Assembly: GCF_006345805.1 (NCBI RefSeq)
Contig: NC_043010.1
Span: 35,588,001-35,652,000 of the forward strand
DNA: 64,000 nt
Direction of reading: 5' to 3'
DNA from: Octopus sinensis
Lineage: Eukaryota
Under the pieces are notes generated by a model. That model searched no databases and had not been told where the DNA came from. It saw nothing but the letters and a program-made list of their open reading frames with translations. The position numbers and the translations under genes were made by a program. This document shows positions 1 to 63,942 of this stretch, piece by piece (within the stretch, counting starts at the first letter, position 1; each line of letters opens with the position of its first letter).

Positions 1-813
1 TTAAGAACCTACTTTCGCATGCTAGATAGAATTAATTGTCAGCTAAGATCACTGTGAAGTTAACATCGCTACCACTTGGTATACAATGGTATATAATCTT
101 TCTCTTTCAGCTGGTTATGGTGGAAGTTGAAACTGATTAGAATGGCATTGTTTTCAATGAAACTCTCGTCAGCCTTGTTGACTATCATCCAAAGCAGTAA
201 TATGGGAGTTATGAGAAAAGTCATGACATCGATTATATGCCATGAAAAATAGGTGAAAAAGATATATTGGAAGGAACGAAATGGCAGAGCTCTCGGGTCA
301 AAGACAGAAGTAGATATTTTATTTAATTCTGAGAATAATTAAAGTTTTGGGGTACCATGATTTTTTCTGCGTGCAGTTGTCCTGCTATATTTCATATTAT
401 TACAAACTAATTTATATTACTTATATGTATCATTGTGTGTGTATGTTCCTTTATAATACTGCAATTAAAACTTTTGATTTTTCCATGGTGCCAGCAATGG
501 AATATTTCAACTAATGTACCTTTACACACCTGCCATTTTTGTCTGACATGAATTGCAGTACATTTTTAGACTCTACAACCCTTGGAACTGGAAACAATTT
601 TTTTTGTGTATTAATGCAGAAAAGCAACTTTCAGCCATTCTTGAAATAATCAGTCATGAATGACGTTAAAGATACAAACACAAAATTTTATAATATATAT
701 ATATATATTTACGAGGATGAAGGAGTAAGTTGACTCTGGTTAAATTTGAGATTCATAATAATAAATGAATGTAAAATTTTCCGCCTATGATAAAAAATAA
801 AAACCAACAGCTG

Positions 814-1372
814 TAGCTGTGTGGTAAGAAGCTATCTTACCAATTACATGGTTCAAGGTTCAGTCCTACTGTGTGGTACCTTGGGCAAGTGTCTTCTACT
901 ATAGCCTTTGGCTGACCAAAACTTTGTGAGTGGATTTGGTAGGCGGAAACTGAAAGAAGCCTCTTGTGTATATCATCATCATCATCATCGTTTAACATCC
1001 ACTATCCATGCTAGCATCGGTTGGATGATTTGACTGAGGACTGGCGAACCAGATGGCTGCACCAGGCTCCAATCTGATCTGGTAGAGTTTCTACTGCTGG
1101 ATGCCCTTCCTAACATCAACCCCTTTGAGAGTGTAGTGGGTGCTTTTATGTGCCACCAGCACGATATATATATATATATGTGTGTGTGTCTGTGTTTGTC
1201 TCCATCACTGCTTGACAATCGGTGTTGGTGTGTTTACGTCCCCGTAACTTAGTGGCTCGGCAAAAGAAACCGATAGAATAAATACTAGGCTTAAGAAATA
1301 AGTCCTGGGGTCAAGTTGGTCATTCAGCATGGCTGCAGTCAAATGACTGAAACAAATAAAAGCATAAAAAAA
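814..1372 (+). mobile_element. tRNA-derived SINE, family 2 (head gtggctgtgtggtaag...), interrupted by an RTE-related fragment at ~985-1130
   Basis: Head gctgtgtggtaagaagc...ggttcaaggttcagtcc, and body shared with copies at 4672, 42060, 44700, 48700 and 56960. Confidence 0.75.
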
Positions 1373-1509: not shown

Positions 1510-16238
<14,729 letters not shown>

Positions 16239-19969: not shown

Positions 19970-22065
19970 GGCAGGAAGAGGACAAACAGTGCACATGTTC
20001 TGTAGATTCCCAAAACTAACGAGAGCGATGTGCTTGACGTTCAGCTCGAACATCTGTTATTGTTTGCTTTTATCTCTTACTTGTTGCTGTGTTTTCATGC
20101 TGTCGTTGATGATGTTGCTGTTTTTGTAGTTGTTGTTCTTGTTCTTGTTGTTGGAGTGGTTGTGAACTGAGCTGCTGTTGTGGTTTTTTGGTATCTTTTT
20201 GCTGTGTTCTTGGAGTAGGACTGTGTACCTTCCTCCTCTTTCTCCAATCCCCTTTTGTCGCAGTGATCCATTGTTCAGTCAGCTCTTCTTTCTCCATGTC
20301 ATTGCTGTTGTTTCTGCAAAAAACAAGAAAATATTTCCAAACTACAGGCGAAATATGTCCATCAATTTCACTGTTGTGAACAAATGCAACAGTGAATTGA
20401 TGGATTTGGTGAAGGGTATAGTCAATTATAGCACTCGAAGTACTTGAGTGGTGTGTCATTTTATCGACTCTCGGAAGAGAGAAAGTCACAGTTGATCACG
20501 ACGGGATTTGAACTTAGAACGTAGAGAGCTCGTACAAATACCGCAAAGTATTTATTCCCGGCGCTCTAACGATTCTGCCAACCCACCAGTTTCCACGCTA
20601 CGGTAAAGACTTCAAATATATGAGAAGGTGACATGGTGATATGGAGGACTCACTGACTGACGATAAAACAAGTACTATTGTGTATTGTTGTTGTTTAGCC
20701 TCCATGTTGATCAATGAATGAGCATACCCATGATTTAAGCCAATGCAACCGTGACCACTCAGTCCTTTTGTATATTTAGGGCAACTATGTCTCAGAGAGC
20801 AGAATGTGATTTGAGGGAATTTGGCAGCTACTTTTAGCAGCAGATGGAGGGTGCGTGTAGGCGCTCCGTCTTTGGCTTATATACGATTAGTGATAACCTT
20901 CTGTGCTGTCCCACGTTGAATTATTGCTTACTTGTGTTATTTTGAAACTGCACTTAAAAGATATTCAGATTTAGATAACATTGTCGTCACCTTACAGACA
21001 AAACAGATGGTGTTTTTGTTGCTTTATCGTATTTCGGTGTAGGTGCTATTTTAAAAAAAAAAGCGGTGGCCAGAGGAGGAAGAGATCAAGCAGTGCACAT
21101 GTCCCGTAGATTCCCCAAACTAATGAGAATAATGAGGTTGGCGTTCAGCTCCAACTTCTGTTAGTATTTGCTTTTATTATCTTTTATTTGTTTCAGTCCT
21201 TGGACTGCGGCCATGCTGGGGCACCACCTTGAAGGGTTTTTATTGAGCGAATCGACCGAGTACCTTTTAATTTACAAAAAAAAAATAAAAATCGGTATTT
21301 ATTCTGTCGGTATTTTTTTTTGCCGAAGCACTAAATTGCAGGGACGTATACAAACCAACATCGGTTGTCAAATGGTAGTGAGGGACAAACGCAAACACAA
21401 AACTGGTCGAAATGAGCTGACAATGTAAACAAAACTATATCGACGAGCTACCTGACATAACAGATCTCCTGGATGGTACTCAACTGTCAGTGTTAGTGGA
21501 AAGTAGAAAACCAAATTGGCTCACTTAAGGGCTTTCTGCCCGCAAACAAGGAAAACAAAACTCCCACCACTGCAAACGCTACAAACACCACAAACACAAA
21601 ATCATGAGGACTTGCTTTAAGCCTGTTACACCTACACCCAAATCAAGAAAACGAAGGAGTTTACTCCCAGCTTCAACGGAAAACCAAGCTCCTTCTGAAC
21701 GCCCAACCCCGCAAACCAACAACAACAGCAATGACACGGAGAAAGAAGAGCAGACCGAACAACGATCACTGCGTCAAAAGGGGGTTGGAGAAGAGGAGGA
21801 GAGTACATAGTCCTACTCAAAGAAGATAGCAAAAAGATACACAAAAACCACAACTGCAGCTCAATTCACATTCACTCCAACAACAAGAACAACAACTACA
21901 AAAACAGCAACATCATCAACGACAGCATGAAAACTCAGAAACACAGAAACAACAAATAATGGAACTGCAAAAACAAGAAAATACTTCCAACTACAGGCGA
22001 AATGTATCCATCAATTTCACTGTTGTGAACAAATAAATGCAGCAGTGAATTGATGGATTTTGTAA
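19970..22065. repeat. Two diverged copies of an unclassified CAA-rich element, one internally inverted and deleted
   Basis: 19970-20060 matches 21070-21170 (direct), 20075-20310 matches 21720-21950 (inverted), and 20314-20410 matches 21966-22065 (direct). Confidence 0.75.
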
Positions 22066-22074
22066 ATCAAAGTA

Positions 22075-25000
22075 AAAGCAAAACTGAGATAGAGAGAAAA
22101 GAATTTGAGGATTTCATCCTCAAAACCCCGAAGGACAGGTTATCAGTTAAAACATCCTAGTCATTTATAAAACAATCCACGAAAAATTCCCATGTGGTGT
22201 GGGAATTTAAAATACTCAATTGACAAAAAGCTTTTGGAAGGGCCTTTTAAAAATCTTTCGGCAGTAGAGAGGCCCGGAACTTCTGGGTTTCTCGAAAATC
22301 AAGTTGAATGACCTCTTTTGCTTTCTCCGACTAGTATGACTGTGCTGAGAGTGGGGTGTGTGAATGTGCGTGGCCTGGGATCAGCTTGGAAGCAAGATCA
22401 CCTGTCCAACGATCTCAGGTCACTTCTGACGGGTACCGACGCGATTTCCCTGATGTGCCAGTGTGGACATAGAGCAACTACAACGAGTCATCCCGATTGT
22501 ATTTAGACAATATTTGTTAGGTCAGAGGATAGGTTGTCCACGATTTAAATTGGTCGGCTACACAAATCACAAATTTGTGATATGCACAATCGATTTAGGT
22601 AGGAACCGTAGACAAGGACCCGGTTACCGACACGCAAATACTACAGGGACCAAATTAGCGTGTTAGTTAAGCTGCAATTAACAGGGGTAGTCGTCAACAA
22701 CTGGTGGTGAATCGCTCTGAAGAGGGCGATTAGAGTAGAATCGATAGCGTTTAGCAAATATTTAGCAATAGAAAGAAATATATTAGAGAGAGAACTAGTT
22801 AGCAAACTAGAAGAGGCTATTAGTAAAAGCATTGTGACCGACTTGTTAGCGGTGAGAATGGTTCTTGATCATTTCTTTAAGGCGCAACACGAAGGAACTA
22901 AAGCCGTCCGATGGGTCCAAACGGTACAGGCACGATATGGTAGCAAAACGACGATCAGGTCTTTGACGGATCAGGACGGGTGCGTGCTACTCGGTCCCGA
23001 GCAGATGTGTGCGACATTCCAGCAGCACTTTGAGCGGATTTTGGGGAAGGAAGATGGCTGAACGACGGTAGCAGACTTTAGTTAGTACCTGGACGAACGC
23101 GAGATGCCGTGAGAAGTCGATGACGGTCACTGAAATACAGGAGGCGATGAGCGATTGCAAATCGCAAAACACCTTGTTTGGATGGTCTACCTCATGAATT
23201 CTATGTATTCATATCAGATTTGATTGGCAGCTTCTTATTTCTTTATTGCCCACAAGGGGCTAAACATAGAGGGGACAAAAAGGACTGACAAAGGAATTAA
23301 CTGGTCCTTAATTTATCGACCCCGAAAGGATGAAAGGCAAAGTCGACCTCGGCGGAATTTGAAGTCCGAACGTAGCGGCAGACGAAATACCTATTTCTTT
23401 ACTGCCCACAAGGGGCTACACACAGAGGGGACAAACAAGGACAGACAAACGGATTAAATCGATTATATCGACCCCAGTGCGTAACTGGTGCTTATTTAAT
23501 CGACCCCGAAAGGATGAAAGGCAACGTTGACCTCGGCGGAATTTGAACTCAGAACGTAACGGCAGACGAAATACCTATTTCTTTATTACCCACAAGGGGC
23601 TAAACATAGAGAGGACAAACAAGAACAGACATAGGTATTAAGTCGATTACATCGACCCCAGTGCGTAACTGGTACTTAATTTATCGACCCCGAAAGGATG
23701 AAAGGCAAAGTCGACCTCGGCGGAATTTGAACTCACAACCTAACGACAGACGAAATACCGCTAAGCATTTCGCCAGGTGTGCTACCTTTTCTGCCAGCTC
23801 GCCACCAGCTGATTGGCAGCTTCTTGGCAGACGTCAACCACAACTGGCAGTAGAACGGAAGAATTCTTAGTGCTGTTAGCCGGAGTGCTGAAAAAAGGAC
23901 TGACAATGGGGACATACTACAGAATTTTCGGCCCATAAACCTGTTAAACACAGAATTTAAGGTTTTGGCCGAGGTGTTAGCAAAAAGGTTGGCGTTTGTT
24001 GTCGGTAGTCTGGTCGGAGAGGCGCAAACGTGCGCAATCCTGAATAGGTCTATCCACGACAACCTCCACATCGTAGATAGTGCTGGAACTAAAGCTGGCT
24101 ACGGTGGGGTCCTGATCAAATTAAGTCAGTTGAAAGCATTCGATAGGGTCGACGATTGCTACTTGGACGTCCTTAAAGCGGCCGGTTACGGACTTGTTTT
24201 CAGTGGCTGGAGTGCTGCAATGTACAGTGGTACTTGCTCGGTGGTAAAAGTAAACGGCCACCTATTGGATCGCACGTTCGGTCCGTTAGAGCTGCTTGCT
24301 GTCACCTCTCCTGTACGTGCTGGCCCTCAAGCCGCTGCTGCGGAAGTTAGAACAGTTAAGGGGCATCCCTTTCGAAATTGGACTAGAGATGGCAGTGTTG
24401 GCGTACACGGACAATGTCACCATCATGGTGTCGGATACCTCAGAAGTGGAGACGGTCGGCTTCATTGTAAAGGAATATGAGTCGGTTGCAGGGGCCAAAA
24501 TAAAAGTCGACAAGTCGGTGGGGTTGCGACTGGGCACCTGGAGAGGCAGATCAATGCCGTCGGATGGTGTCGTCGAACGCTGGACTGATAGACCGTTTAA
24601 ACTGCTCGGGGTCTGGCTCGGTCCCGACCTCCAGGTGGATAAGAATTGGGACGAGGTGACGAACAGGGTGACAAGACTTATCCATAAATGGATAAAGAAG
24701 AAGCTGTTCTTGAAAGGTCGGGCAGAGGTGGTGAATGCCTTCATCGCTGTCGTCACCATTTACCACCTGAGCGTTATCCCATGTCCCAGTTACTATTTGA
24801 TTAGGTTGGAGTGTTTCTTGTTTATTTTCTAATGATCAGGCGGTCAATCTTCTGCCAGCTCCCTCTGCATGGCGGTTTAGGCATGCCATGGCTTTTGATG
24901 CGCAGATACGCACTCTGCAACGATTTCTAGACGTTGAACATGTGTGGGATCCCATTGCGAGACACGTCATTCTGCAGCTTGTCTCTTTGACGGAGCTGCA

Positions 25001-25830
25001 GTCCTGGATGAAGGATAGACTGAGGCTGGGTGCTTGGCACCTAGAATGTCGTCAGGCACTCACAGTGCTCTACCAGACGGGACATAGGATCATTAGATGT
25101 TCCACTTTAGCTATATTTTGAAGATTAGTGGCAGAGAAGTGCGACGACGTTCTCAGAGAGATCCTGGATGTCGACGAAAACAAACTGGCTACTCTGTTCC
25201 GGAAGGCTTTCCAACCGGGGACAACTATGGATAATCTCCACCTGTCTTTGACCTGGTCGTTCTACCAGGGGGTAATACTGGTTCGAGATAAACTCTACAG
25301 GCACGGATTTGCTGTCAGATGGGTTCGTCCGAGATGTGTGCAGAGCGACGGAACCGTTCTGCAAGCACTCGTTCAGTGTTCTGGCACTGTTGACTTGCGG
25401 AGTTATGTCGAACAGCTGCTATCATGTGTAGGACGGATCCGTCTGTCGTCCGAGTCCACAGTAAGGATTGCCTCTCCGCCCTCTGGTGGATAAAACTGAA
25501 AGGGATGAGGACAGAGGCATTCCTCTTTGATAAAGCACTCATTAACTTTTCAAGTTTCACTTGAAAAGGAAAGTGAGGGTGGAGAGGGAGGTGCTGTCCT
25601 TGAGTGGACGAAAGTTGCGAAAATGGCAAGAGTGGATTGTACCACTCTAAGTGTAGACCTGTGAGTCGGAGGAAAAGAGTTGATATTCCTTGTCCTTGGT
25701 ATTCAGGGAGACTTCGATGGTGAGATTCAGGGAAATCTTGGATGGTGGGGTCCCTCGATCATCCCTAGAAGTACTGCTGTATCAGGAGAACCAATCACTA
25801 TCACCTTTTCTTTAACTCTTTTATTCTCTT
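22075..25830 (+). mobile_element. Degenerate Tx1/L1-clade LINE (ORF1 tail, APE endonuclease, RT, C-terminal Cys region, 3' UTR), with a SINE array inserted
   Basis: APE start LRVGCVNVRGL; RT FRPINLLNTEFKVLAEVLAKRL, GVLIKLSQLKAFDRV, LSPLLYVLAL and AYTDNV (degenerate YADD); C-terminal RPRCVQS...ALVQC. There are many stops and frameshifts. Confidence 0.9.
23237..23809 (-). mobile_element. Trimeric SINE family 1 insertion with a 16-bp target-site duplication
   Basis: TGATTGGCAGCTTCTT at 23221-23236 and 23810-23825. Units of 155, 184 and 184 bp plus a single head. Confidence 0.9.
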
Positions 25831-25880
25831 ACTGTCATATACTGTGTATACTTCTCTTCTTTTAGTGTATATCGCGTATG

Positions 25881-25922
<42 letters not shown>

Positions 25923-26073
25923 TATATATAAAACCAATAATATACTGGTCGACGATATAATATATATCATAATATAATTACTCTATTTCTCATATCGAGT
26001 ATGGATTTTTTCCTGATTTATGGACAACTAACTTATTTTACATACGCACGCACACACACACACACACAACACA

Positions 26074-32943: not shown

Positions 32944-33059
32944 TTAACTGATTAAATCTACATCCTTGGGTTTCAACATTCTGGATATTTCATGGATGAC
33001 ACCGTTGTTTGCGGGAATGTCTCGGCTGACGATGTGGGCTCTCTCCACTGTGATGGTAC
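32944..33059 (-). CDS. FAS-M exon 6 (terminal): (G)TITVERAHIVSRDIPANNGVIHEISRMLKPKDVDLIS*
   Basis: Acceptor ctcttcacag|GT, H2 motif, TAA at 32946..32944. Confidence 0.93.
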
Positions 33060-35334: not shown

Positions 35335-38300
35335 GGTGGTGAGAGAGAAACAAAGAAAGGACGATTGAAGAAATTAAAAAGTGATAAGAAATGAAAGTAA
35401 CAATGGAATTCTTACCGAAAAAGCCTTCTCTGATGAGAAGTTTGTCACCGGTTGCAAGAGTTTGCAGGTATGTTGTGTGCATTCCAGCCCTCCACAGGAC
35501 TCCGTGAACAATGTGGTACCTCATCAGAACTGGATGGCAGAAAGGAAGAGTGACAACATTTCATGCTTAATGTTCTTTATTCTTTAATGTATTTAGAAAT
35601 GAAATGATAATTTCTTAATTATTGATAAAAATAATTTTATGTATACAAGCCATTGATATACTGTACTAGACAATATTTATTAAGATTTTCAGTATGCCAT
35701 TAATAATTGTGGGTTTATACATTAGAGAATACGTGAACATCTGAAGTCGCTAGTCAGTCATTGAGAAAATCCCACTGTTGGATTTAAAATGGTTTTACTG
35801 ACCCCTCATTTTCTGCCCACGAAGTTATTGTGTATAAAGGTAAGGCGTTTAGAGTTCTCAGTACACGTAGTGTTGATTAAAATCTTTAGACATATTCACT
35901 GAAATAAAGCACTGTTAACGCATTAGTAGTAATTTAATAACCCGTTGAGCGTGACCCAACCCAAAATGTTGCCAATGATTATTTTATCATCTCTGGAGAA
36001 ATGAAATGCAAATGTCTGCGGCTGGATTTGAACTCAGGACGAAAAGAGACACTGGTAATTACTGTTTTGCATTTAGCATGGTAATCCAACGTGTGTGATT
36101 TTTCGAAGGGAAATTGTGGGGGAATTTGATTTCCATGTGTTTCTCGACAGCATTAGTAAAAGTGTAAGTAAAGCGAAATGATTTTAAACCAGGAATTGAA
36201 ACCTGGAACTTACACGCGGCTTACGAACTCGATGAGGTTCAACATCGTGATGGCGTTCAGTTAGATTTCTCCTCTGATGCACTCAATTAAATTATAAGCC
36301 GGATATGACGTAGAAGGCATGGAATTAAGTGAGATTAAACACAAAAATTAAACAATTTCTCGGTTGAATAATTTCTCCATTTCCTTCAGAAATACGTTAC
36401 CGTCTGCAGGATTGATAATTCAATAAGATAGCGCTACTTTTCATGATTATGCTTAACAGCTCTATTTCGTTGATTAGCTTGGTTTCCTTGGCTGTATATA
36501 TAATCATATCGGAGAGTATGATGATGATGGTTGCTTTGTCGTTTTCTGTGACTGTTGTATATTTATGCTATTTCTTTTCTATTGATATTTCTTAATGCTT
36601 GCATAATTTCCAGTGTATGAAAGCCTCATTACATTTAAAATTAGAATTAAAATTATTATTATTATTATTATTATTGTTGTTGTTGTTGTTGTTATATATG
36701 GTTTGAGAAATATATCACGAGTTTCCAACAAGCCATCAATTGTCAAGAATCTATGTTACAAGAGGTGTTCGTGTATTTATGTTTCGGAAGCTTCGTCCGT
36801 TGAGATTGTAGATTCTTGTAATTTGTTTCACAAAATGTGCACTGAAAATTCTCAGTGAACGTGTGGACGAAGGCTTTATGTACTCATTTCGCGATGCATT
36901 ATGGGGATGCATGTTAATGTGAACGTATAAAGGCACAAACTAAAGGGCAACATTTCAAAATGGCGCTAAGAGCGACTGGGTTTCGATTCTTACCTTCGGA
37001 TAGAGCAACATCGCCTTCGATACGCTGCAGAGTGGTGTTGCTGTAACGGTTAAATGCATCGTTGTTCGGTACGAAGACAGTGTAGGGACCATCTGAAAGG
37101 TTGAGAAGAATTGTAGCAGTTAGTTTATTTATTACAACGAATATGAGTCCCTTCCCCAGTTACTCAATAAATGTAGTTGAGTGTATTTATTTCAATCTGA
37201 GTTTTCAGTCTATCGCTACTCTAAGGTTATTGTTATAACGTGCTAACGATTCTGTCAGCTTGCCATCTTTAAACAATGTTTTATATTGGTTTCAAATTTT
37301 GGCACCAAGCCAGCAATTTCGAGGAGGGGTTAAGTCGAATACATCGACCCCAGTGCTCAATTTTTACTTATTTTATCGTTCTCGAAAGGTTGAAAGGCAA
37401 AGTCGACTTCGACGGAATTTGAACTCAGAAAGTAAAGATGGACAAAATGCCGCTAAGTGATTTGTCCGGCGTGCTAACTTGGTTTTGTAAGTAAATGCCT
37501 AACTGTTAGTCTGGATAAGCTTGAATTTTCAGAAAAGGAAAATCAACCAACTAATTCGCACATTGCAAATACTATTTGTGAGTGGAACAGTAAAAATATG
37601 CAAGACTTTTTTCAGGTTTAAAATGTGACATTGTTTTCGTTATTCACATTCCAATGAGGGAGCTTTGTATCTTTGTTAGAAGCCAGCTCCTTCAGAGGAA
37701 GAAAATAATTTAAATGATTAAATATAGAAGATATACCATAAATCCTCGAGTATAGTCCCTTAAATACAGAAGATATACCATAAATCCTCGAGTATAGTCC
37801 GCCCTTGAGTATAATACGCAGGGGATTTTAGGAGGCTGTACCTCTGAAAAACCTAAACATTGTGTATAATACGTACCCCTTCTCTAACTTGAGTCGTGCG
37901 TAATTAAGCCAGCAGCACCTAGTCGAACAAACACTTCCGTGCATGCGTAATACAACAATGATGTTCTTAACTGTTATATGGGAATGTAAATATGTTTGCA
38001 AATTGCAGGAAGTGGGGGTGAACCCTACTGTACTCTTTCACCACAACTTTCACTCATTCTTCCTGCTTCTATTGTACCTGTATTCCAAAGGGTCAGCCTA
38101 GTCACACTCTGTGTCTCGCTGAATCTCCCGAGAACTACGTTGAGGGTACACGTGTCTGTGGAGTGTTCAGCCACTTGCACATTAATTTCACGAGTAGGCT
38201 GTTCCGTTGATCGGATCAACTGGAACCCTCGTCGTCGTAATCGACGGAGTGCCACGATGTATATATGTACACACACACACACACGCGCGCGCGCATACAA

Positions 38301-38659: not shown

Positions 38660-39211
38660 CGCGCGTGTGTGTGTGATTGAGTGAGATTTGGCTCCTACTT
38701 ACTCTCTAATTCTTTGTGCAAGTTAGTGTTCTTAAGCAGATGTGCCATGATGGAAAATCTAGGAGTGTTGAGTATAGTGTCGTACAGGTTGTCTGTTGGC
38801 GCGAGCATCACTTCATCTATGATGTGTAAAACACCATTAGTGGCCACATTGTCAACGCTTACTAGCTCACAGCCTTCAACAGTGACAGCCTACAGAAAAG
38901 AAAGAAAGAAATATTCATCACCAATAGTAGCTATCACAAACAAATTGAAACCTCGAACAGATGTAAATCTTAAAAAAAAAACACACACAAAAAACCAAAC
39001 ACAAAAAACCAAACAAAAGCAATAAAGCAGTTTAGTTTCTTAAGATGAGTTTCATACTCTGAGAACGATAATCTTATAAGCCAATACATCCATACACAAT
39101 AATGCGGAAATGAAACCAATAAAATAGTGAAATGATGACGATGATGATGATAGTAAAAAAAAAAAAAAAAAAAAAAATAATAATAATAATAATAATAATT
39201 ATAATTATAAT

Positions 39212-39312: not shown

Positions 39313-39560
39313 CCTTTAATATTAATAATCCTTTCTACTATAGGCACAAGGCCTGAAATTTTGAGGCAGGGGACTAGCCGATTACATCGACCCCAGTGTT
39401 TCACTGGTACTTTATGTTATCGACTTCGAAAGGATGAAAGGCAAAGTCGACCAAGGAGGAATTTGAACTCAGAACGTAACGACGGACGAAATACCGCTAA
39501 GCATTTCGCCCGGCGTTCTAACATTTCTGCCAGCTCACCGCCTTAATAATAATAATAATG

Positions 39561-40081: not shown

Positions 40082-40722
40082 TAGCGTTTATGTGTATGAT
40101 AGCGTGTGTGTGGCAGTAACAGCGCGTGTGTGTGCATGCGTGGTATCATGTGTGCGTGTGGTGGTGGTGGCGTGTGTGTGTGTGTGATAGCGAGTGTGTG
40201 TATGGAAATTTGGTCAATGCTCTTCTAGTTTTGACAATTCACTAAAATTGGATTCCGGATCTACTCGTGTATAAGTCACTCTATGTTATACTCAAATTGT
40301 AGCTAAAAAAATAAAAAATCGAGGGTGCGACTGATACATGGGGCGAAACTAAAGCCATTATTAAGAAAAAATATTTGGTACTTAGATTTGACACTAAATT
40401 AAGGTACGATTTAAACCCGAGTAAATATGGTATATATGTATATATATATATTTTACCCGATTCGCTCGGTAAACATTCACACGGATCTTCGGCCCAGCTA
40501 CGGAAGTTAATTCCATATCATTTTTCTGAAGGTCTTTGTACATAACTATGCCTTGTACAACATGGTATTTGAGAAAGGCTTCCAGTGCAACAGAATCGTT
40601 TTTCAACTCTTGAAGAAAGGTATGACCCATTTCGTCAAAGGCCTCGTCAGTGGGTGCAAAGATAGTCCATTGTCCTTTAAATAAATAGAGAGAATTATTA
40701 ATATATATATATATATACATAT

Positions 40723-41072: not shown

Positions 41073-42209
41073 GATTAATTAAAAAACAAAAAAGACAAGA
41101 AAAAACAACGTGAGGACGTAGCACATACAAAGTATTAAAACGCTCAGAGAAGGAAAGAGTGGTTGTTTTACGTTTCGAGCATAGCCCTTCTTCGGAAACA
41201 GGAGACAGGAAAGTCTGAAAAAAAATGGAGGTATGAGAAAAAAATCCCCAACAGTTCACGTGTAGTTTCATTTTTGAAATGACCGGAAGTAGATGGACAA
41301 ATTGCTTTCTGGGACAAGAGAGTGTGAAGAACGGTTGGTATGTGTGTGTATGTGTGTGTGGTGCCATGTGTGTGTATGTGTGTGTGATAGCATTTGTGTG
41401 TATGATAGCGCGTGTGTGTGTGTTGCAGTAACTGAGTGTGTGTGTGTATGTGTGTGTGATAGCATTTGTGTGTATGATAGCGCGTGTGTGTGTGTGGCAG
41501 TAACTGAGTGTGTGTGTGTATGTGTGGTAGCATGTATGGTGGTGGTGGTGTGTGTGTACGTAGTAGCGAGTGTGTGTATGGTAGCGTGTGTGTAAGGCAG
41601 TAACTGAGTGTGTGTGTGTGTGCGTGGTAGCATGTGTGCGTGTGGTGGTAACTGTGTGTGTGTACACACATGCATACGCCACGCACACAAAAATAATGAC
41701 GCACACACACATATATATATATATGCATATACCATACCAACTATATATACATATACCATTGCACACTACTCAGTAGGCATCAACTTTATCTTTCCGAGAT
41801 AATTTCAGGTGACGCAGGGAATATATTCGAATATTTTCTGTTTCATTTCGTCTTTCCAAATAATTGATTAAGAAGGGCTTGTTTCCTAAAGTGTAGCAAT
41901 TACCTAAACACCGACCGTCATGGCTTTCGAAGAAGGAGTGACTGCTTAACACTGCTTCTACACCGCTTTTGATAATGTTTAAATGATTCGAGAGAGGGCT
42001 AAAACACAGATGCCAACCACAGCATTCGATTTCAAGACGTTTTCCGTAGAAAAATTACGCGTGGCTGTGTTTTAAGAGGCTTTCTCCCTAACCACATGGC
42101 TCCAAGTTCAATCCCACTGTCTAGCACCCTGGGCAAATGTCTTCTACTATAGTCTTGGGCCGACCAAAACCTTGTGAGTGATTTGGTAGACGAAACTGAA
42201 AGAAGCCTG

Positions 42210-42260
<51 letters not shown>

Positions 42261-44655: not shown

Positions 44656-44686
<31 letters not shown>

Positions 44687-44900
44687 CGTATATATATATG
44701 TTTTATCATTTGCTAATTTTAGTCATTAGACTGGGGTCATGCTGGGGTACACCCTTGACGTTTTTAGTCGAATGAATCGACCCCAGTACTTACCTTTTTA
44801 AAGCCTGGTATTTATTCTACCGATCTCTTTTGCCGAACCGCCAAGTTACGGGGACGCAAACCAAAACCGGTTGTCAAGTTGTGGTGGGCAGAGAAACACA

Positions 44901-44970
<70 letters not shown>

Positions 44971-46160
44971 CAGCTTCTTTCAGTTTTCCGCCTACAAATC
45001 CACTCACAAAGCTTTGCTCGGCGCGAAACTATAGTAGAAAACACTTAGCCAAGGTGCCACGCAGTGGGACTGAACCCGGAACTATGTGGTTGGGAAGCAA
45101 ACTTCTTACCACACAGTCACGCCTATAAACACACAGGCATAAATCTTACAGTGACCTATAAGGGTTATTGTCAAAAGTGTCCACTGTACTTCGTGCTGAA
45201 TTTAGACTTTGGCGTAATTAAAAAACAAAAAATAACAACCACTACTACTTCGTTGTTTTGTTTTCTTATTTTATAGATATGTCAACAGCCCCAGATTCGA
45301 CTTTTGTCTCTGAGTATGTATCATTAGATCTGAAAACAGATTATAACCAGATTACATCATGACACTGCTAACTATGAGACATGCAATGATATATCAGAAC
45401 ATCTTTCACAATTTTTCGTTACCAGAAACGAGAATAATTACCCAATATCATCCACAGCTATATTATTGAGTGAACTTAATAATTATGATGAACTTCTGAA
45501 TTTTTGGTCGGTGCACAGCGCTCTTGCAGCACATACAAAGAATATACGTACCTAATATGTGTGTGTGTGATTCAAAACCTTACTGCATTTCAGTTTTAAC
45601 TGACCTACTGATAAAAACCTAACATCAACAACCATTCCAGCAATAAATAAATGGGAAACATACGTAACATTAGTCGCTAAAATCTCGACCACAATGAATC
45701 TCCAATAATTGTCACTAAAACAACATCACTCAGAATTTCAGCCAGAAGAAATTCTTGCAACCGATGAAGAGTTTTCAAATCGAATATCCATCCCAACGTA
45801 CACAAAAAACCAAACCAAAAAAAATAATTTTTTTTTCATTAGCTTTATACCGTTTATTACAGGTTCATCAGGATATGTGCAAAGTCGAAATTGAATTCTC
45901 AGAAAGACAATGAAGCCTTATAATACATATCGCTACAGATGATCACGTTAACTGGGATAACAAAAGTCTTCAAGTCGTTCTTAAAATTTAGAAGTTGAAT
46001 GGTTACGCAAAGTGAGGCAAAAATAGTGAGTCAAACTCTTTCCCGCTTTTCAAATTATCATTTCTTTGCAGTCTTGTCACCGAGCTAATGACCAGTCAAA
46101 ATAAGCGCTAAAATTCCAACCGTACAGAGAAGATACATACATACATGTATGCATGCATAG

Positions 46161-47242: not shown

Positions 47243-47830
47243 GTTTGACTAACAAAACCGCCCGGGGACGTTCTTTCTGATAGTTGGAAGCACTCCGTCG
47301 GTTACGACGACGAGGCTTCCGGTTGATCCGATCAACGGAACAGCCTGCTCGTGAAATTAACGTGTAAGTGGCTGAGCACTCCACAGACACGTGTACCCAC
47401 GGGGATATTCAACGTGACACAGAGAGTGACAAGGCCGGCCCTTTGAAATACAGGTACAACAGAAACAGGAAGGAAGTAAGAGTGAGAGAAAGTTGTGTTG
47501 AAAGAGAGCCTCGTGGAGCTTTAGGTGTTTTCGCTCAATAAACACTCACAACGCCCGGTCTGGGAATCGAAACCGCGAGTCCTACGACCGCGAGTCCGCT
47601 GCCCTAACCACTGGGCCATTGCGCCTCCACTTTCTGATAGTACATATAATAGCTTGTGTAAAATGCATACCTGATTCGTTAAGTTTCTGAGCTAAGCCAG
47701 CTGTTTCTCCGAGATCCACCAAGATGTCGTGCAGGCCATATTTCTTTGCGATTTCTAGCAAAGTTAAATTGAAGTGACTGTATGCGGAAGCACCAACCAC
47801 ACAGAGAACAATTAAGAAAAGGGCTTTCAT
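32944..47830 (-). CDS. FAS-M: complete 6-exon gene for a secreted protein with two FAS1 domains, 297 aa
   Basis: GT-AG introns with phases 1,0,1,1,1. The protein has a signal peptide MKALFLIVLCVVGASA, H1 motifs WTIFAPTDEAF and YTVFVPNNDAF, YH motifs KYHVV and RYHIV, and H2 motifs NGVLHIIDEVM and NGVIHEISRML. Confidence 0.94.
34311..34800. mobile_element. Two tRNA-derived SINEs joined head-to-head, with (AAT)n middles and a Penelope-like tail
   Basis: 34311-34537 (minus) and 34538-34800 (plus) are inverted copies. The head is gggcatatgacgtagtagttaagagcgc...gagttcaattc and the tail is ctgatgaaggctggtgggtatatcagccgaaacg. Confidence 0.85.
35069..35095 (+). repeat. Short telomere-like (TTAGGG)n tract
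   Basis: aggtttagggtttagggttagggctag. Confidence 0.8.
35416..35529 (-). CDS. FAS-M exon 5: (V)LMRYHIVHGVLWRAGMHTTYLQTLATGDKLLIREGFF
   Basis: Acceptor ccatccag|TT, donor G|gtaaga, 114 nt. Confidence 0.93.
36994..37092 (-). CDS. FAS-M exon 4: (N)GPYTVFVPNNDAFNRYSNTTLQRIEGDVALSE
   Basis: Acceptor cctttcag|AT, donor G|gtaaga, 99 nt, H1 motif. Confidence 0.93.
37296..37478 (-). mobile_element. SINE family 1 copy
   Basis: B box and core match the other copies. Confidence 0.8.
37722..37890 (+). mobile_element. pogo/Tigger-like terminal fragment with a duplicated 5' end
   Basis: taccataaatcctcgagtatagtcc occurs twice, 41 bp apart. Confidence 0.5.
38000..38250 (+). mobile_element. SINE family 3 (3' part)
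   Basis: Reverse-complement match to 47265-47520. Confidence 0.8.
38703..38889 (-). CDS. FAS-M exon 3: AVTVEGCELVSVDNVATNGVLHIIDEVMLAPTDNLYDTILNTPRFSIMAHLLKNTNLHKELE
   Basis: Acceptor ttttctgtag|GCT, donor A|gtaagt, 187 nt, H2 motif. Confidence 0.94.
39322..39543 (-). mobile_element. SINE family 1 full monomer inside an (AAT)n array
   Basis: Head ggtgagctggcagaaatgttagaacgccgggcgaaatgcttagcgg, B box, and tail gcctatagtagaaagga, flanked by (aat)n. Confidence 0.88.
40457..40674 (-). CDS. FAS-M exon 2: (G)QWTIFAPTDEAF...KYHVVQG...KIRVNVYRANR
   Basis: Acceptor tatttaaag|GA, donor CGG|gtaaaa, canonical H1 and YH motifs. Confidence 0.94.
41340..41690. repeat. Cryptic (GT)-based minisatellite (~60-bp units), with a homologue at 40005-40200
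   Basis: Recurring gatagc and gcagtaactgag landmarks within GT runs. Confidence 0.8.
43020..43270 (-). mobile_element. Helitron PIF1-helicase C-terminal fragment
   Basis: GKYNGDDVFIPRIPLIPSDLSYEFKRLQF is a hallmark Helitron helicase motif. Confidence 0.85.
43496..44655 (+). mobile_element. Solo-LTR-like element (1160 bp)
   Basis: TGTTACG...CATAACA termini with ATAT on both flanks, inside (TA)n. There is no internal coding region. Confidence 0.65.
44700..45125 (-). mobile_element. SINE family 2, near full length
   Basis: Matches 4672-5055. Confidence 0.85.
47265..47628 (-). mobile_element. SINE family 3, near full length, ~40 bp downstream of the FAS-M exon 1 donor
   Basis: Intact tRNA-like head with A and B boxes. 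Confidence 0.88.
47671..47830 (-). CDS. FAS-M exon 1: signal peptide plus first FAS1 helices (MKALFLIVLCV...AQKLNES)
   Basis: ATG at 47830 and a phase-1 donor G|gtatgc in frame with exon 2. Confidence 0.9.
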
Positions 47831-48617: not shown

Positions 48618-49376
48618 ATGAACTCACCACATTTCATCACATTTTTAGTTGAGTACAATGAGATTTGAGGGTGATTTGACTGTCATGTCTAACAAACAGT
48701 TCGATCACGTAGTGGTCCACATGATTCCAGGTTCAGTCCCACTGTGTGGTACTTTGAGCAAGTGTCTTCTACTATAGCCTCTGGCAGACCAAAGCCTTGT
48801 GAGTGGATTTGGTGGACGGAAACTGAAAGAAACCCGTCGTCGGTATTGTTCATTGTATGTGGATCTGATCAATAATTGCTTTCAACTTTCCGGTCAACAA
48901 ACACTCCATCGGGTACATAAGCAAATAAGAAACCTTATACCCAGCTGTTGATATGGTGTTTCTGCGCTTTTCTGGTAGTATTGCACGCGTATGTGTGTGC
49001 GAGAGAGAGAGAGAGAGAGAGAGTGTGTGTGTGTGTGTTTATGTGTGTATTTTGATGTATATATGTATATTATAGATGGTCTATTATGGGTATAACTGTT
49101 GTAAAATATTTATGTAATGCAGCGTGAAAATTATAATTTATAAGCAATGAAACAAATCCATTTTTAAAGGTGTATCCTTTAACTAGTTTTGATTATATCG
49201 TTATTTCTATTCCATTTTAACAAAGCTGTCCGACGAACGGGAACGTGAAACTCTGAGTAACAGCTTTTGTTATATTTCTGCTGCTTTTAAATAAAACATA
49301 CTACACTACCGCTGGTATTTGAGTACTCTTTTTTCCACCTTGTTTCACATTTATGTGCTTACTTCCGTGTATATAT

Positions 49377-53529: not shown

Positions 53530-53999
53530 GTATGTGTTACCCCCAGCTGGACAGGACGCCAGTCCATCGCGGCGTTACTCAAGAAAGAGTGAGAGAAAGT
53601 TGGGGCGATAGAGTACAACAGGGTTCGCCACTACCCCCTACCGGAGACTCGTGGAGCTTTAAGTGTTTTCGCTCAATAAACACACACAACGCCCAGTCTG
53701 GGAATCGAAACTGCGATCCTCCGACCGCGAGTCCGCTGCCCTAACCACTGGGCCATTGCACCCTTTTAAAGCCTAGCCAGGCTCATGGGCCCGGTTTCCC
53801 GGTTTCAATGGCGTATGTGTTCCCCAGCTGGACGGGATGCCAGTCCATCGCAGCGTTACTCATTTTTGGCAGCTGAGTGGACTGGAGCAACAAGAAATGA
53901 AGTGTTTTGCTCAAGAACACGTGTCACCCGGTCCAGGAATCGAAACCACAATCTTACGATCATGGTGCTGACACCCTAACCACTAAGCCACGCGCTTCC
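53530..53999 (-). mobile_element. Two adjacent tRNA-derived SINEs with different heads and a shared core
   Basis: Heads at ~53700-53760 and ~53935-53999. The core ccccagctggac.gga.gccagtccatcgc is present in both. Confidence 0.75.
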
Positions 54000-56589: not shown

Positions 56590-57182
56590 CACCTTAACTT
56601 GTATATACTTTAAGAGTGCCATAAATTGCGGTATTTGTGCCGCCTCTCCCAACTGAACCCTTTTCCGGCCCTTCGCTGTCTGACGCGCTACCACCAGTCC
56701 GTCGCATTTTAAAGGGTGGCATTTTTATTTTTTTATAACCTTTCCCTGGCCGTGTAAGGATCAGAGGTTACTTCCGAAACGCATTAATTTTTACCGTTGC
56801 CGGTGGCAGGACAAAAGATTATTTTCGTCGTCCCGAACAACTGGAGCGCTGGTTCAACTCCAACCAAAGGAACTAGAGCACAATGTTCCCCTGTTTATTC
56901 ACCTCCGTAACAATATCTATGTGTGTGTGTGTGCGTGTCTGTGTGGATGTATGTATACATCTATGTGTGTGTCTGTGTTTGTCTCCCACCATCGCTCTAC
57001 AACCAGTACTGGTTTGTTTTCGTTACCGTAACTTAGCGTTCCGGTAAAAGGAAGCCGATATGATAAGTACCAGACTTTAAAAAAATAATTACCAAAGTAG
57101 ACTTGTTCAACCAAACCCTTGAAGGCAGTGCCCCAGCATGACCGCAGTCCAATGACTGAAGCAAGTAAAAGATAAAAGATAC

Positions 57183-57227
<45 letters not shown>

Positions 57228-57730: not shown

Positions 57731-63942
<6,212 letters not shown>

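What the first reader, a model, noticed from the sequence alone, without database searches (positions are those of the whole stretch)
36943..37235. FAS-M vs FAS-R exon 4 is an island of divergence inside near-identical introns
Seen (hand alignment with 61066-61360): exon 4 differs at 28 of 99 nt (~72% identity; 11 of 33 aa change, with several 2-3-nt codon swaps and about 9 silent changes). The intron on the acceptor side differs at ~15 of ~144 nt (~90%), and the donor-side 51 nt differ at 1 position. Elsewhere (intron 3 donor side) the introns are only ~75% alike. Known: introns more conserved than exons is a pattern seen in diversifying venom and recognition gene families. Inference, three options: gene conversion homogenised the flanks while selection purged conversions of the exon; the exon was swapped in from another paralogue; or the flanks are constrained as splicing or ADAR-editing structures, which is relevant in coleoids.
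Basis: partly seen in the sequence, partly recalled or inferred. Interest (0 to 1): 0.78.

Follow-up and report, generated by a model that had tools for sequence, protein, structure and literature searches.

The report
Old exon between near-identical intron flanks
Two neighbouring octopus fasciclin-domain genes have almost identical intron sequence for about 50 bases on each side of their fourth exon, although the exon is as diverged as the rest of the genes; this is most likely patchy copying between the two genes and is a modest curiosity.

Summary
The window is Octopus sinensis. It holds three tandem minus-strand genes, R, M and L, each encoding a secreted protein with two FAS1 domains (TGFBI/periostin-like). 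Exon 4 of M and R differs at 28 of 99 nt. The 50 intron bases on each side differ at 1 of 50. Other splice-proximal intron sequence in the pair is 64-88% identical.

The emphasis needs reversing, because the flanks are the anomaly and the exon is not. Exon 4 has dN/dS 0.45, like exons 3 and 6. Its excess divergence sits in three multi-nucleotide blocks. Outside them it looks ordinary and old (pS 0.34).

Similar tracts of about 55-60 nt cover the start of exon 5 and, in O. vulgaris, the signal-peptide codons. The flank sequences are absent from paralogue L and from the single Argonauta co-orthologue. No RNA structure, Rfam family or flank-to-flank pairing was found.

Best reading (about 0.45): short-tract gene conversion between M and R produced a mosaic, and exon 4 was left out. 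Main rival (about 0.28): Octopus-specific splicing elements under strong constraint. Intron sequence from other octopods would decide between them, and I could not obtain it.

The parts
36994..37092 (-). M gene exon 4 (99 nt). It encodes (N)GPYTVFVPNNDAFNRYSNTTLQRIEGDVALSE, the H1 motif and following helices of FAS1 domain 2.
   Evidence: Splice sites read directly. The sequence matches O. sinensis protein P0001. 28/99 nt differ from R.
37093..37144 (-). T1 (M): the last 52 nt of intron 3, holding the branch-point-like CTAAC, the polypyrimidine tract and the AG. One mismatch to R.
   Evidence: 52-nt segment with at most 1 mismatch, paired with R 61216-61267.
37145..37235 (-). Rest of the alignable acceptor-side intron, about 87% identical to R with a 2-nt indel. 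Homology stops at 37235. M has a SINE-like repeat at 37290-37478, and R has a CA/CG microsatellite at the matching place.
36943..36993 (-). T2 (M): the first 51 nt of intron 4, with one mismatch to R. O. sinensis M has an 8-nt deletion at its distal end. In O. vulgaris M the tract runs to about +56.
36732..36942 (-). Distal donor-side intron, still alignable with R at background identity (78%).
61117..61215 (-). R gene exon 4 (99 nt), encoding (S)[32 protein letters not shown].
   Evidence: Identical peptide in O. vulgaris protein P0004.
61216..61267 (-). T1 (R), counterpart of M 37093-37144.
61066..61116 (-). T2 (R), counterpart of M 36943-36993.
35474..35533 (-). T3 (M): the last 4 nt of intron 4 plus the first 56 nt of exon 5. 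It includes a 46-nt perfect run with R and has no synonymous difference. Counterpart: R 60075-60134.
60075..60134 (-). T3 (R).
38703..38889 (-). M exon 3 (187 nt), 80.7% identical to R exon 3 (63756-63942).
35416..35529 (-). M exon 5 (114 nt), 88.6% identical to R exon 5 (60017-60130); dS 0.06.
32944..33059 (-). Coding part of M exon 6, ending at the stop codon. 79.3% identical to R 57731-57846.
7809..7907 (-). Exon 4 of the older paralogue L (99 nt, same phases). Its flanks are unrelated to T1/T2.

Best explanation
M and R are tandem duplicates of a secreted two-FAS1-domain gene. They are old (dS about 0.33) and diverged by 19-27% wherever they still align. On this background lies a mosaic of short tracts (52-61 nt) that are 98-100% identical: the last 52 nt of intron 3, the first 51-56 nt of intron 4, the first ~56 nt of exon 5 and, in O. 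vulgaris, the first 54 nt of the coding sequence.

I read these as products of short-tract interlocus gene conversion, or template switching, between M and R that took place before the O. sinensis/O. vulgaris split.

Exon 4 was not converted. Its synonymous divergence is as old as that of the rest of the gene. It also carries three multi-nucleotide blocks (7, 5 and 3 consecutive mismatches).

Inferred, not shown:
- Tract ends fall at the splice junctions because the junction consensus sequences are the best microhomology in otherwise diverged DNA.
- The dense mismatches of exon 4 block heteroduplex extension, and/or converted exons were removed by selection.
For: 1. Near-identity is statistically real and patchy. 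Three disjoint tracts in the window: 0 of 5,000 permutations. A fourth tract lies at the ATG in O. vulgaris.
2. Tracts occur in coding and non-coding DNA alike and have similar lengths and divergence.
3. In exon 5, M equals R at synonymous sites where Argonauta differs freely, so that tract is specific to the pair and not deeply constrained.
4. The signal peptide is identical at nucleotide level between M and R but unrelated in Argonauta.
5. T1 and T2 have no counterpart in paralogue L or in the single Argonauta co-orthologue, although both have the same 99-nt exon and intron positions.
6. Tract divergence (2/100) is close to the O. sinensis/O. vulgaris divergence (0.7-1.3%) and far below the pair's dS of 0.33.
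7. Exon 4 outside its three blocks has pS 0.34, so it did not share the flanks' recent history.
8. A diverged exon between flanking introns kept at low divergence is documented for duplicates under conversion, for example red/green opsin exon 5 (PMC3924837).
Against: - Both inner tract ends coincide with splice sites to within 5 nt, which random conversion endpoints would rarely do.
- Identity falls with distance from the exon (98, 90, 84% upstream; 98 then 68% downstream). That looks like splice-linked constraint.
- Local background identity of about 80% is low for efficient homologous exchange (my knowledge of other animals, not tested here).
- No site shows a species-specific state shared by both paralogues, so there is no direct trace of conversion since the species split.
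- The rest of the gene is not homogenised, unlike the classic opsin and RH cases.
Confidence: 0.45

Rival explanations
1. Purifying selection on intronic splicing elements. T1 and T2 would be Octopus-lineage exon-definition or regulatory sequences for a 99-nt, frame-preserving exon whose own sequence is free to change. They would have been kept nearly invariant in both copies since before the duplication.
For: - Tracts abut both splice sites, and identity decays with distance from them.
- The exon length is a multiple of 3, so skipping would keep the frame.
- The conserved flanks are about 50-100 nt long. That is the scale I recall for flanks of alternatively spliced exons (own knowledge, Sorek and Ast 2003; only listed papers on the topic and none was read).
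- There were no substitutions in T1, T2 or exon 4 between O. sinensis and O. vulgaris in either gene, though about 2 were expected, so this carries no weight.
Against: - It needs about 98% of 100 intron positions to be constrained while the pair's dS is 0.33, which is far stronger than I would expect of splicing elements.
- The sequence is absent from L and from the Argonauta co-orthologue, which share the exon and intron positions.
- O. sinensis M tolerates an 8-nt deletion at the end of T2.
- It does not explain the synonymous identity in exon 5 and in the signal-peptide codons.
- No transcript evidence for exon-4 skipping was available.
Confidence: 0.28
2. The whole segment from about -52 to +56 was homogenised recently. 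Exon 4 of one copy, probably M, was then overwritten, either from a third paralogue or by exon-limited segment replacement (ASSET-like).
For: - Exon 4 mismatches are clustered in runs of 7, 5 and 3, together 15 of 28 (permutation p = 0.006). Other exons have runs of at most 3-4.
- The relative rate reverses. In exon 4 the M lineage carries 12 derived changes against 6 in R. In the other exons the counts are 17 against 44 (Fisher p = 0.005).
- Exon 4 has the highest dS (0.63).
- Replacement of short exon segments while intron segments stay similar is described for snake three-finger toxin genes (PMC2474615).
Against: - Outside the three blocks pS is 0.34. Single synonymous changes are therefore as old as the gene pair and do not postdate the flanks.
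- No donor was found. L exon 2 and the first-domain exons of M and R match M or R variant states at chance level. L's own exon 4 was not tested this way; its peptide is about 45% identical to those of M and R. The protein search found no other Octopus paralogue with an M-like or R-like exon 4.
- dN/dS of 0.45 gives no sign of positive selection.
Confidence: 0.1
3. The flanks are held by RNA secondary structure, for example a duplex that loops out exon 4 or an ADAR editing-complementary sequence.
For: Only the general fact, from my own knowledge, that coleoids edit RNA heavily and conserve sequence around edited sites.
Against: - The exon plus flanks folds no better than shuffled sequence (z = +0.5 for M, +1.25 for R), and the two copies fold differently.
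- Each flank alone, on either strand, gives z between -0.65 and +0.61.
- Pairwise duplexes among T1, T2, T3 and exon 4 all have |z| below 2.
- No Rfam family matched.
- Exon differences are 13 transitions to 15 transversions, which is not an A/G signature.
Confidence: 0.03
4. Chance clustering of differences, or an assembly or polishing artefact.
For: A single tract of at least 52 nt with at most 1 mismatch is only marginal on its own (p = 0.055).
Against: The joint configuration has p of about 5e-4, and three tracts occur in 0 of 5,000 permutations. The independent O. vulgaris assembly has the identical pattern.
Confidence: 0.02

Closest known systems
Peak of divergence in duplicated genes undergoing interlocus gene conversion (red/green opsin exon 5; RHCE/RHD; reviewed in PMC3924837)
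   Same: Tandem paralogues, with one exon clearly diverged while the introns directly beside it are almost identical.
   Different: In those cases most of the gene is homogenised and the peak marks selected amino-acid changes. Here only about 50 nt on each side is near-identical, the rest of the gene is 19-27% diverged, and the exon shows dN/dS 0.45.
Islands of divergence despite conversion in Tigriopus californicus GOT1 paralogues (PMC3728101)
   Same: [quoted passage not shown]
   Different: I saw only the abstract, so the scale was not compared. Here the identical tracts are very short and anchored at splice sites.
ASSET and 'introns more conserved than exons' in snake venom three-finger toxin genes (PMC2474615, PMC2711939)
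   Same: Short exon segments are replaced by unrelated sequence, intron segments stay similar, and signal peptides are nearly identical among paralogues.
   Different: This is not a toxin family. Intron similarity is limited to splice-proximal tracts. No accelerated non-synonymous evolution was found.
Conserved intronic flanks of alternatively spliced cassette exons
   Same: About 50-100 nt conserved on both sides of a short exon whose length is a multiple of 3. The typical scale is from my own knowledge (Sorek and Ast 2003); only listed papers on the topic.
   Different: Conservation there is between orthologues and usually includes the exon. Here it is between paralogues, excludes the exon, and is absent in Argonauta and in L. 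No alternative splicing of exon 4 has been shown.
Periostin / TGFBI (beta-ig-h3) FAS1-domain extracellular proteins
   Same: P0001 aligns along tandem FAS1 pairs of periostin and TGFBI (E about 1e-49), and Pfam Fasciclin matches twice.
   Different: The octopus proteins are short (296-297 aa: signal peptide plus two FAS1 domains). They lack the EMI domain and the four-domain array of the vertebrate proteins.

Membership tests
FAS1 (fasciclin) domain proteins | Significant match to Pfam Fasciclin PF02469 | tested here: met
   P0001 (M) scores 201.7 bits with two stretches. P0004 (R orthologue) scores 144.9 bits. P0002 (Argonauta) scores 199.1 bits.
FAS1 (fasciclin) domain proteins | Sequence relatives with solved FAS1 structures | tested here: met
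   Periostin 5yjh (E = 1.3e-49) and TGFBI 5nv6 (E = 4.4e-49), aligned over residues 44-292.
Conversion with a selected peak of divergence (opsin / RH type) | Identical fragments longer than expected from the distribution of differences (GENECONV-type test) | tested here: met
   Three disjoint tracts of at least 50 nt with at most 1 mismatch: 0 of 5,000 permutations. The core-versus-flank contrast peaks at exon 4, reached by 10 of 20,000 permutations.
Conversion with a selected peak of divergence (opsin / RH type) | Paralogues within a species more alike than orthologues between species in the converted parts | tested here: inconclusive
   O. vulgaris is only 0.7-1.3% diverged. All M/R differences are fixed paralogue differences, and no species-specific shared states were seen. 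No intermediate species could be reached.
Conversion with a selected peak of divergence (opsin / RH type) | Low divergence over most of the duplicated unit | tested here: not met
   Alignable blocks are 73-81% identical, and intron interiors do not align.
Conversion with a selected peak of divergence (opsin / RH type) | Evidence of selection on the diverged exon | tested here: not met
   dN/dS is 0.45 for exon 4 against 0.49 and 0.58 for exons 3 and 6. The functional effect of the changes cannot be tested here.
Conserved flanks of an alternative cassette exon | Frame-preserving exon with about 50-100 nt of conserved intron on both sides | tested here: met
   The exon is 99 nt. The flanks are 98% identical over 50 nt on each side, between paralogues.
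Conserved flanks of an alternative cassette exon | Flank conservation in orthologues of other lineages | tested here: not met
   The Argonauta co-orthologue has the same exon, but its flanks are a tandem repeat and a microsatellite. Paralogue L has unrelated flanks.
Conserved flanks of an alternative cassette exon | Transcripts with and without the exon | not testable with these tools
   No transcript data were available. The only variant annotation seen (P0003) uses an internal donor in exon 3 and keeps exon 4.
ASSET-type exon segment switching | Short exon segments changed to unrelated sequence | tested here: met
   Runs of 7, 5 and 3 consecutive mismatches, p = 0.006.
ASSET-type exon segment switching | Introns highly similar throughout, and accelerated non-synonymous change | tested here: not met
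   Intron similarity is restricted to splice-proximal tracts. dN/dS is below 1.
ADAR / dsRNA-constrained sequence | Stable, conserved double-stranded structure involving the conserved tracts | tested here: not met
   Fold z-scores range from -0.65 to +1.25, and duplex z-scores are all below 2 in magnitude.
ADAR / dsRNA-constrained sequence | A-to-G differences between RNA and DNA | not testable with these tools
   No RNA reads were available.

The most novel reading that the evidence does not exclude
T1 and T2 are lineage-specific, almost invariant splice-proximal elements (about 50 nt on each side) that carry the exon-definition information for exon 4 in both genes. The exon's own sequence is thereby freed to change, including by multi-nucleotide block replacement. 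This would be a case of splicing information moved from exon to intron in a young gene pair.
Probability: 0.2. Interest if true: 0.6.

Novelty: new member of a known kind. Interest (0 to 1): 0.35.

Why it matters
If the conversion reading holds, this is a clean small example of duplicates that have mostly escaped concerted evolution but still exchange about 50-nt patches. It also shows that exon/intron junctions can end up as tract boundaries. That is useful as a caution for dating duplicates and for reading 'conserved non-coding' sequence in cephalopod genomes. If the constraint reading holds, it would be an unusually strong intronic element specific to Octopus. In both cases the finding gives no evidence of diversifying selection on this FAS1 family.

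Tried and rejected
1. The third 'exon 4' copy at 12459-12554 is L's exon 2 (first FAS1 domain). My early statement that L lacks intron 4 was wrong. L's real exon 4 is at 7809-7907.
2. A 43-nt 'tract' upstream of exon 2 is an (AT)n microsatellite, so it is an artefact.
3. A mutually exclusive exon pair is ruled out, because there is no further exon-4-like sequence in the introns.
4. RNA structure, small-RNA hairpins and Rfam families were all negative.
5. Reaching other octopods failed three ways:
   - The protein search returned only O. sinensis, O. vulgaris, Argonauta and two distant transcript-derived proteins.
   - A search with the open frame that reads through exon 4 and both flanks found nothing.
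   - A metagenome scan for the T2 core found nothing.
6. A constraint test using O. sinensis against O. vulgaris has no power. It gave 0 substitutions where about 2 were expected, and M has a 2.5-kb low-divergence stretch that also covers deep intron.
7. The open reading frame through both flanks (81 and 77 codons) is probably chance in AT-rich DNA (my rough estimate, about p = 0.03), and it is shared only because the flanks are identical.
8. No ORF or tandem repeat explains the flanks.
9. In one search I printed the flank divergence as 2/139. The correct figure is 2 mismatches in the 100-103 nt of T1 plus T2.

Full report
**What is there.** The window is identical to Octopus sinensis chromosome CM016872.1 (locus L001). 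It carries three tandem genes on the minus strand.
- R runs from 57.7 kb to beyond 64 kb.
- M has its coding exons at about 47.8, 40.6, 38.8, 37.0, 35.5 and 33.0 kb.
- L has exons at about 12.5, 10.0, 7.9, 5.7 and 1.6 kb.

M encodes P0001, a 297-aa protein named 'transforming growth factor-beta-induced protein ig-h3-like'. It has two Pfam Fasciclin domains and aligns along tandem FAS1 pairs of periostin and TGFBI (E about 1e-49). Exon 4 encodes the H1 motif (TVFVPNxDAF) and the following helices of the second FAS1 domain. An N-x-T sequon in it is kept in M (NTT), R (NAT) and Argonauta (NST), as read.

**The observation.** M exon 4 (36994-37092) and R exon 4 (61117-61215) are both 99 nt and differ at exactly 28 positions. 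The acceptor-side 143 nt has 13 mismatches and a 2-nt indel, and the donor-side 51 nt has one mismatch. In 50-nt bins counted outward from the exon, identity is:

| Side | Bins (nearest the exon first) |
|---|---|
| Upstream | 98%, 90%, 84% |
| Downstream | 98%, 68%, 80% |

The first 50 nt of the other exons' flanks are 77-88% identical, and deeper bins are 41-86%. Intron interiors do not align at all. The exons themselves are 80.7%, 71.7%, 88.6% and 79.3% identical (exons 3 to 6).

Tests of significance:
- Flanks (2/100) against exon (28/99): Fisher p = 6e-8.
- A scan of all 1,731 alignable columns for a divergent 99-nt core with conserved 50-nt flanks peaks at exon 4. Only 10 of 20,000 permutations reach that value.
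- The independent O. vulgaris assembly shows the same pattern, and every M/R difference is fixed in both species.

**The exon is not the oddity.** Nei-Gojobori estimates for M against R:

| Exon | dS | dN | dN/dS |
|---|---|---|---|
| 3 | 0.38 | 0.18 | 0.49 |
| 4 | 0.63 | 0.29 | 0.45 |
| 5 | 0.06 | 0.14 | 2.46 |
| 6 | 0.37 | 0.215 | 0.58 |

Exon 4 therefore shows no sign of diversifying selection. Fifteen of its 28 differences lie in three runs of 7, 5 and 3 consecutive mismatches (permutation p = 0.006), while other exons have runs of at most 3-4. Outside these blocks pS is 0.34 and pN is 0.10, like the rest of the gene. If each block counts as one event, exon 4 has about 16 events in 99 nt, close to the 19% background.

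With Argonauta as outgroup, the M lineage carries more of the exon-4 changes (12 against 6), whereas R is the faster copy elsewhere (17 against 44; Fisher p = 0.005). The outgroup is distant, so this polarisation is rough.

**The flanks belong to a mosaic.** Across the window's alignable M/R sequence there are three tracts of at least 50 nt with at most one mismatch:
- T1: the last 52 nt of intron 3.
- T2: the last 5 nt of exon 4 plus the first 51 nt of intron 4.
- T3: the last 4 nt of intron 4 plus the first 56 nt of exon 5, including a 46-nt perfect run.

The complete O. vulgaris genes add a fourth tract, the first 54 nt of the coding sequence, which encodes the signal peptide MKALFLIVLCVVGASAYS.

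In T3, M and R agree at synonymous sites where Argonauta differs freely. The Argonauta signal peptide is unrelated. These tracts are therefore specific to the M/R pair and are not deeply constrained.

**Are the flanks an old element?** No. Argonauta hians has a single co-orthologue of M and R, with the same 99-nt exon and intron positions. Its flanks are a tandem repeat and a microsatellite. Paralogue L also has a 99-nt exon 4 in the same phase, with unrelated flanks. T1 and T2 occur nowhere else in the window.

**Structure and RNA explanations.**
- The exon with its flanks folds no better than shuffled sequence in M or R, and the two predicted folds differ.
- Each flank alone on either strand is unremarkable.
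- Duplex energies among T1, T2, T3 and exon 4 are within 2 sd of shuffles.
- Rfam gives nothing.
- Exon differences are 13 transitions and 15 transversions, so there is no A/G bias.

**Age.** O. sinensis and O. vulgaris differ by 1.2-1.3% across these loci and by 0.65-0.73% in the alignable blocks. Tract divergence between M and R (2/100) is of that order, against dS 0.33 for the pair. Both tract mismatches are shared by the two species. If the tracts are conversions, they predate the species split, though not by much.

The species pair cannot test constraint. It gave 0 substitutions in T1/T2 where about 2 were expected, and M has a 2.5-kb low-divergence stretch that includes deep intron.

**Interpretation.** Two readings survive.

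*Conversion.* Short-tract conversion or template switching between M and R explains:
- the near-100% identity;
- the presence of tracts in coding and non-coding DNA;
- their similar size and age;
- their absence from L and Argonauta.

It does not by itself explain why both inner ends sit on splice sites, or why identity falls away from the exon. My inference is that junction consensus sequences supply the best microhomology in about 80%-identical DNA. I also infer that the dense block mismatches of exon 4 stop heteroduplex extension, or that converted exons were selected against. The opsin exon 5 case shows that a diverged exon between flanking introns kept at low divergence does arise under conversion (PMC3924837). 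There, however, the whole gene is homogenised, which is not so here.

*Splice-linked constraint.* This explains the boundaries and the gradient. It requires almost every one of about 100 intron positions to be constrained, in an element that L and Argonauta lack. It also leaves the synonymous identity of exon 5 and the signal-peptide codons unexplained.

A mixed model is plausible: mild constraint keeps junction-proximal sequence similar enough for conversion to continue there after the rest of the gene has escaped.

I give conversion 0.45 and constraint 0.28. I give 0.10 to replacement of the exon after homogenisation, because no donor was found and the single synonymous changes are old. RNA structure gets 0.03 and chance or artefact 0.02. 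The remainder is unassigned.

**Limits.** No transcript or editing data were available.

Noticed in passing
window 35474-35533 (M) and 60075-60134 (R): The first ~56 nt of exon 5 are almost identical between M and R. There is a 46-nt perfect run and exon 5 dS is 0.06, while Argonauta differs at many synonymous sites there.
   Followed up: partly
L003:10001-10054 vs L002:5700-5753 (O. vulgaris M and R exon 1; M exon 1 is window ~47669-47830): The signal-peptide codons are near-identical at nucleotide level between M and R (54 nt, 1 mismatch, starting at the ATG). The mature part is 70-80% identical. R's exon 1 lies outside the window.
   Followed up: partly
window 3265-3636, 6546-6764, 9211-9319 (inverted), 23236-23806 (three tandem units), 37290-37478, 39320-39542, 59108-59226: A SINE-like interspersed repeat of about 150-190 nt with 74-89% identity among copies. 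One copy sits just upstream of where M/R homology ends on the acceptor side of exon 4. ARAGORN finds no tRNA in the window.
   Followed up: no
window 813-1368, 4671-5052 (inverted), 42056-42219, 44680-45125 (inverted), 48717-48840, 56920-57198, 21180-21399: A second interspersed repeat family, 70-90% identical, present in both orientations.
   Followed up: no
window 47506-47625 and 53644-53762: A 120-nt repeat, 93% identical, just inside M intron 1 and in the R-M intergenic region. In O. vulgaris the corresponding sequence looks tRNA-like to the eye (GGCCCAGTGGTTAGGG...). This was not tested.
   Followed up: no
window 36943 (M, O. sinensis) vs L003:~20860: O. sinensis M lacks 8 nt (CTTGTATA) at the distal end of T2. 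The 8 nt are present in O. vulgaris M and in R of both species, and the site is flanked by a short CTT repeat.
   Followed up: partly
L004:15656-15850 (Argonauta hians): The intron upstream of the Argonauta exon 4 is a tandem repeat in which each unit carries TACTAAC, a perfect branch-point-like motif.
   Followed up: no
L002:5700-5861 and L003 (O. vulgaris annotations P0004, P0003): The O. vulgaris gene models look incomplete. P0004 (R) starts inside exon 2, although an exon-1-like sequence lies 4.1 kb upstream. P0003 (M) uses an internal GT in exon 3 and drops 44 residues.
   Followed up: partly
window 40454-40675 (M exon 2) and 12345-12554 (L exon 2): In the first FAS1 domain of M and L, the stretch matching exons 4 and 5 of the second domain is one uninterrupted exon. 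The intron after exon 4 is therefore specific to the second domain, and M, R, L and Argonauta all have it.
   Followed up: partly
window 22001-26000: GC content rises to 44-47% against a window background of about 36-38%. This partly overlaps the tandem SINE-like units.
   Followed up: no
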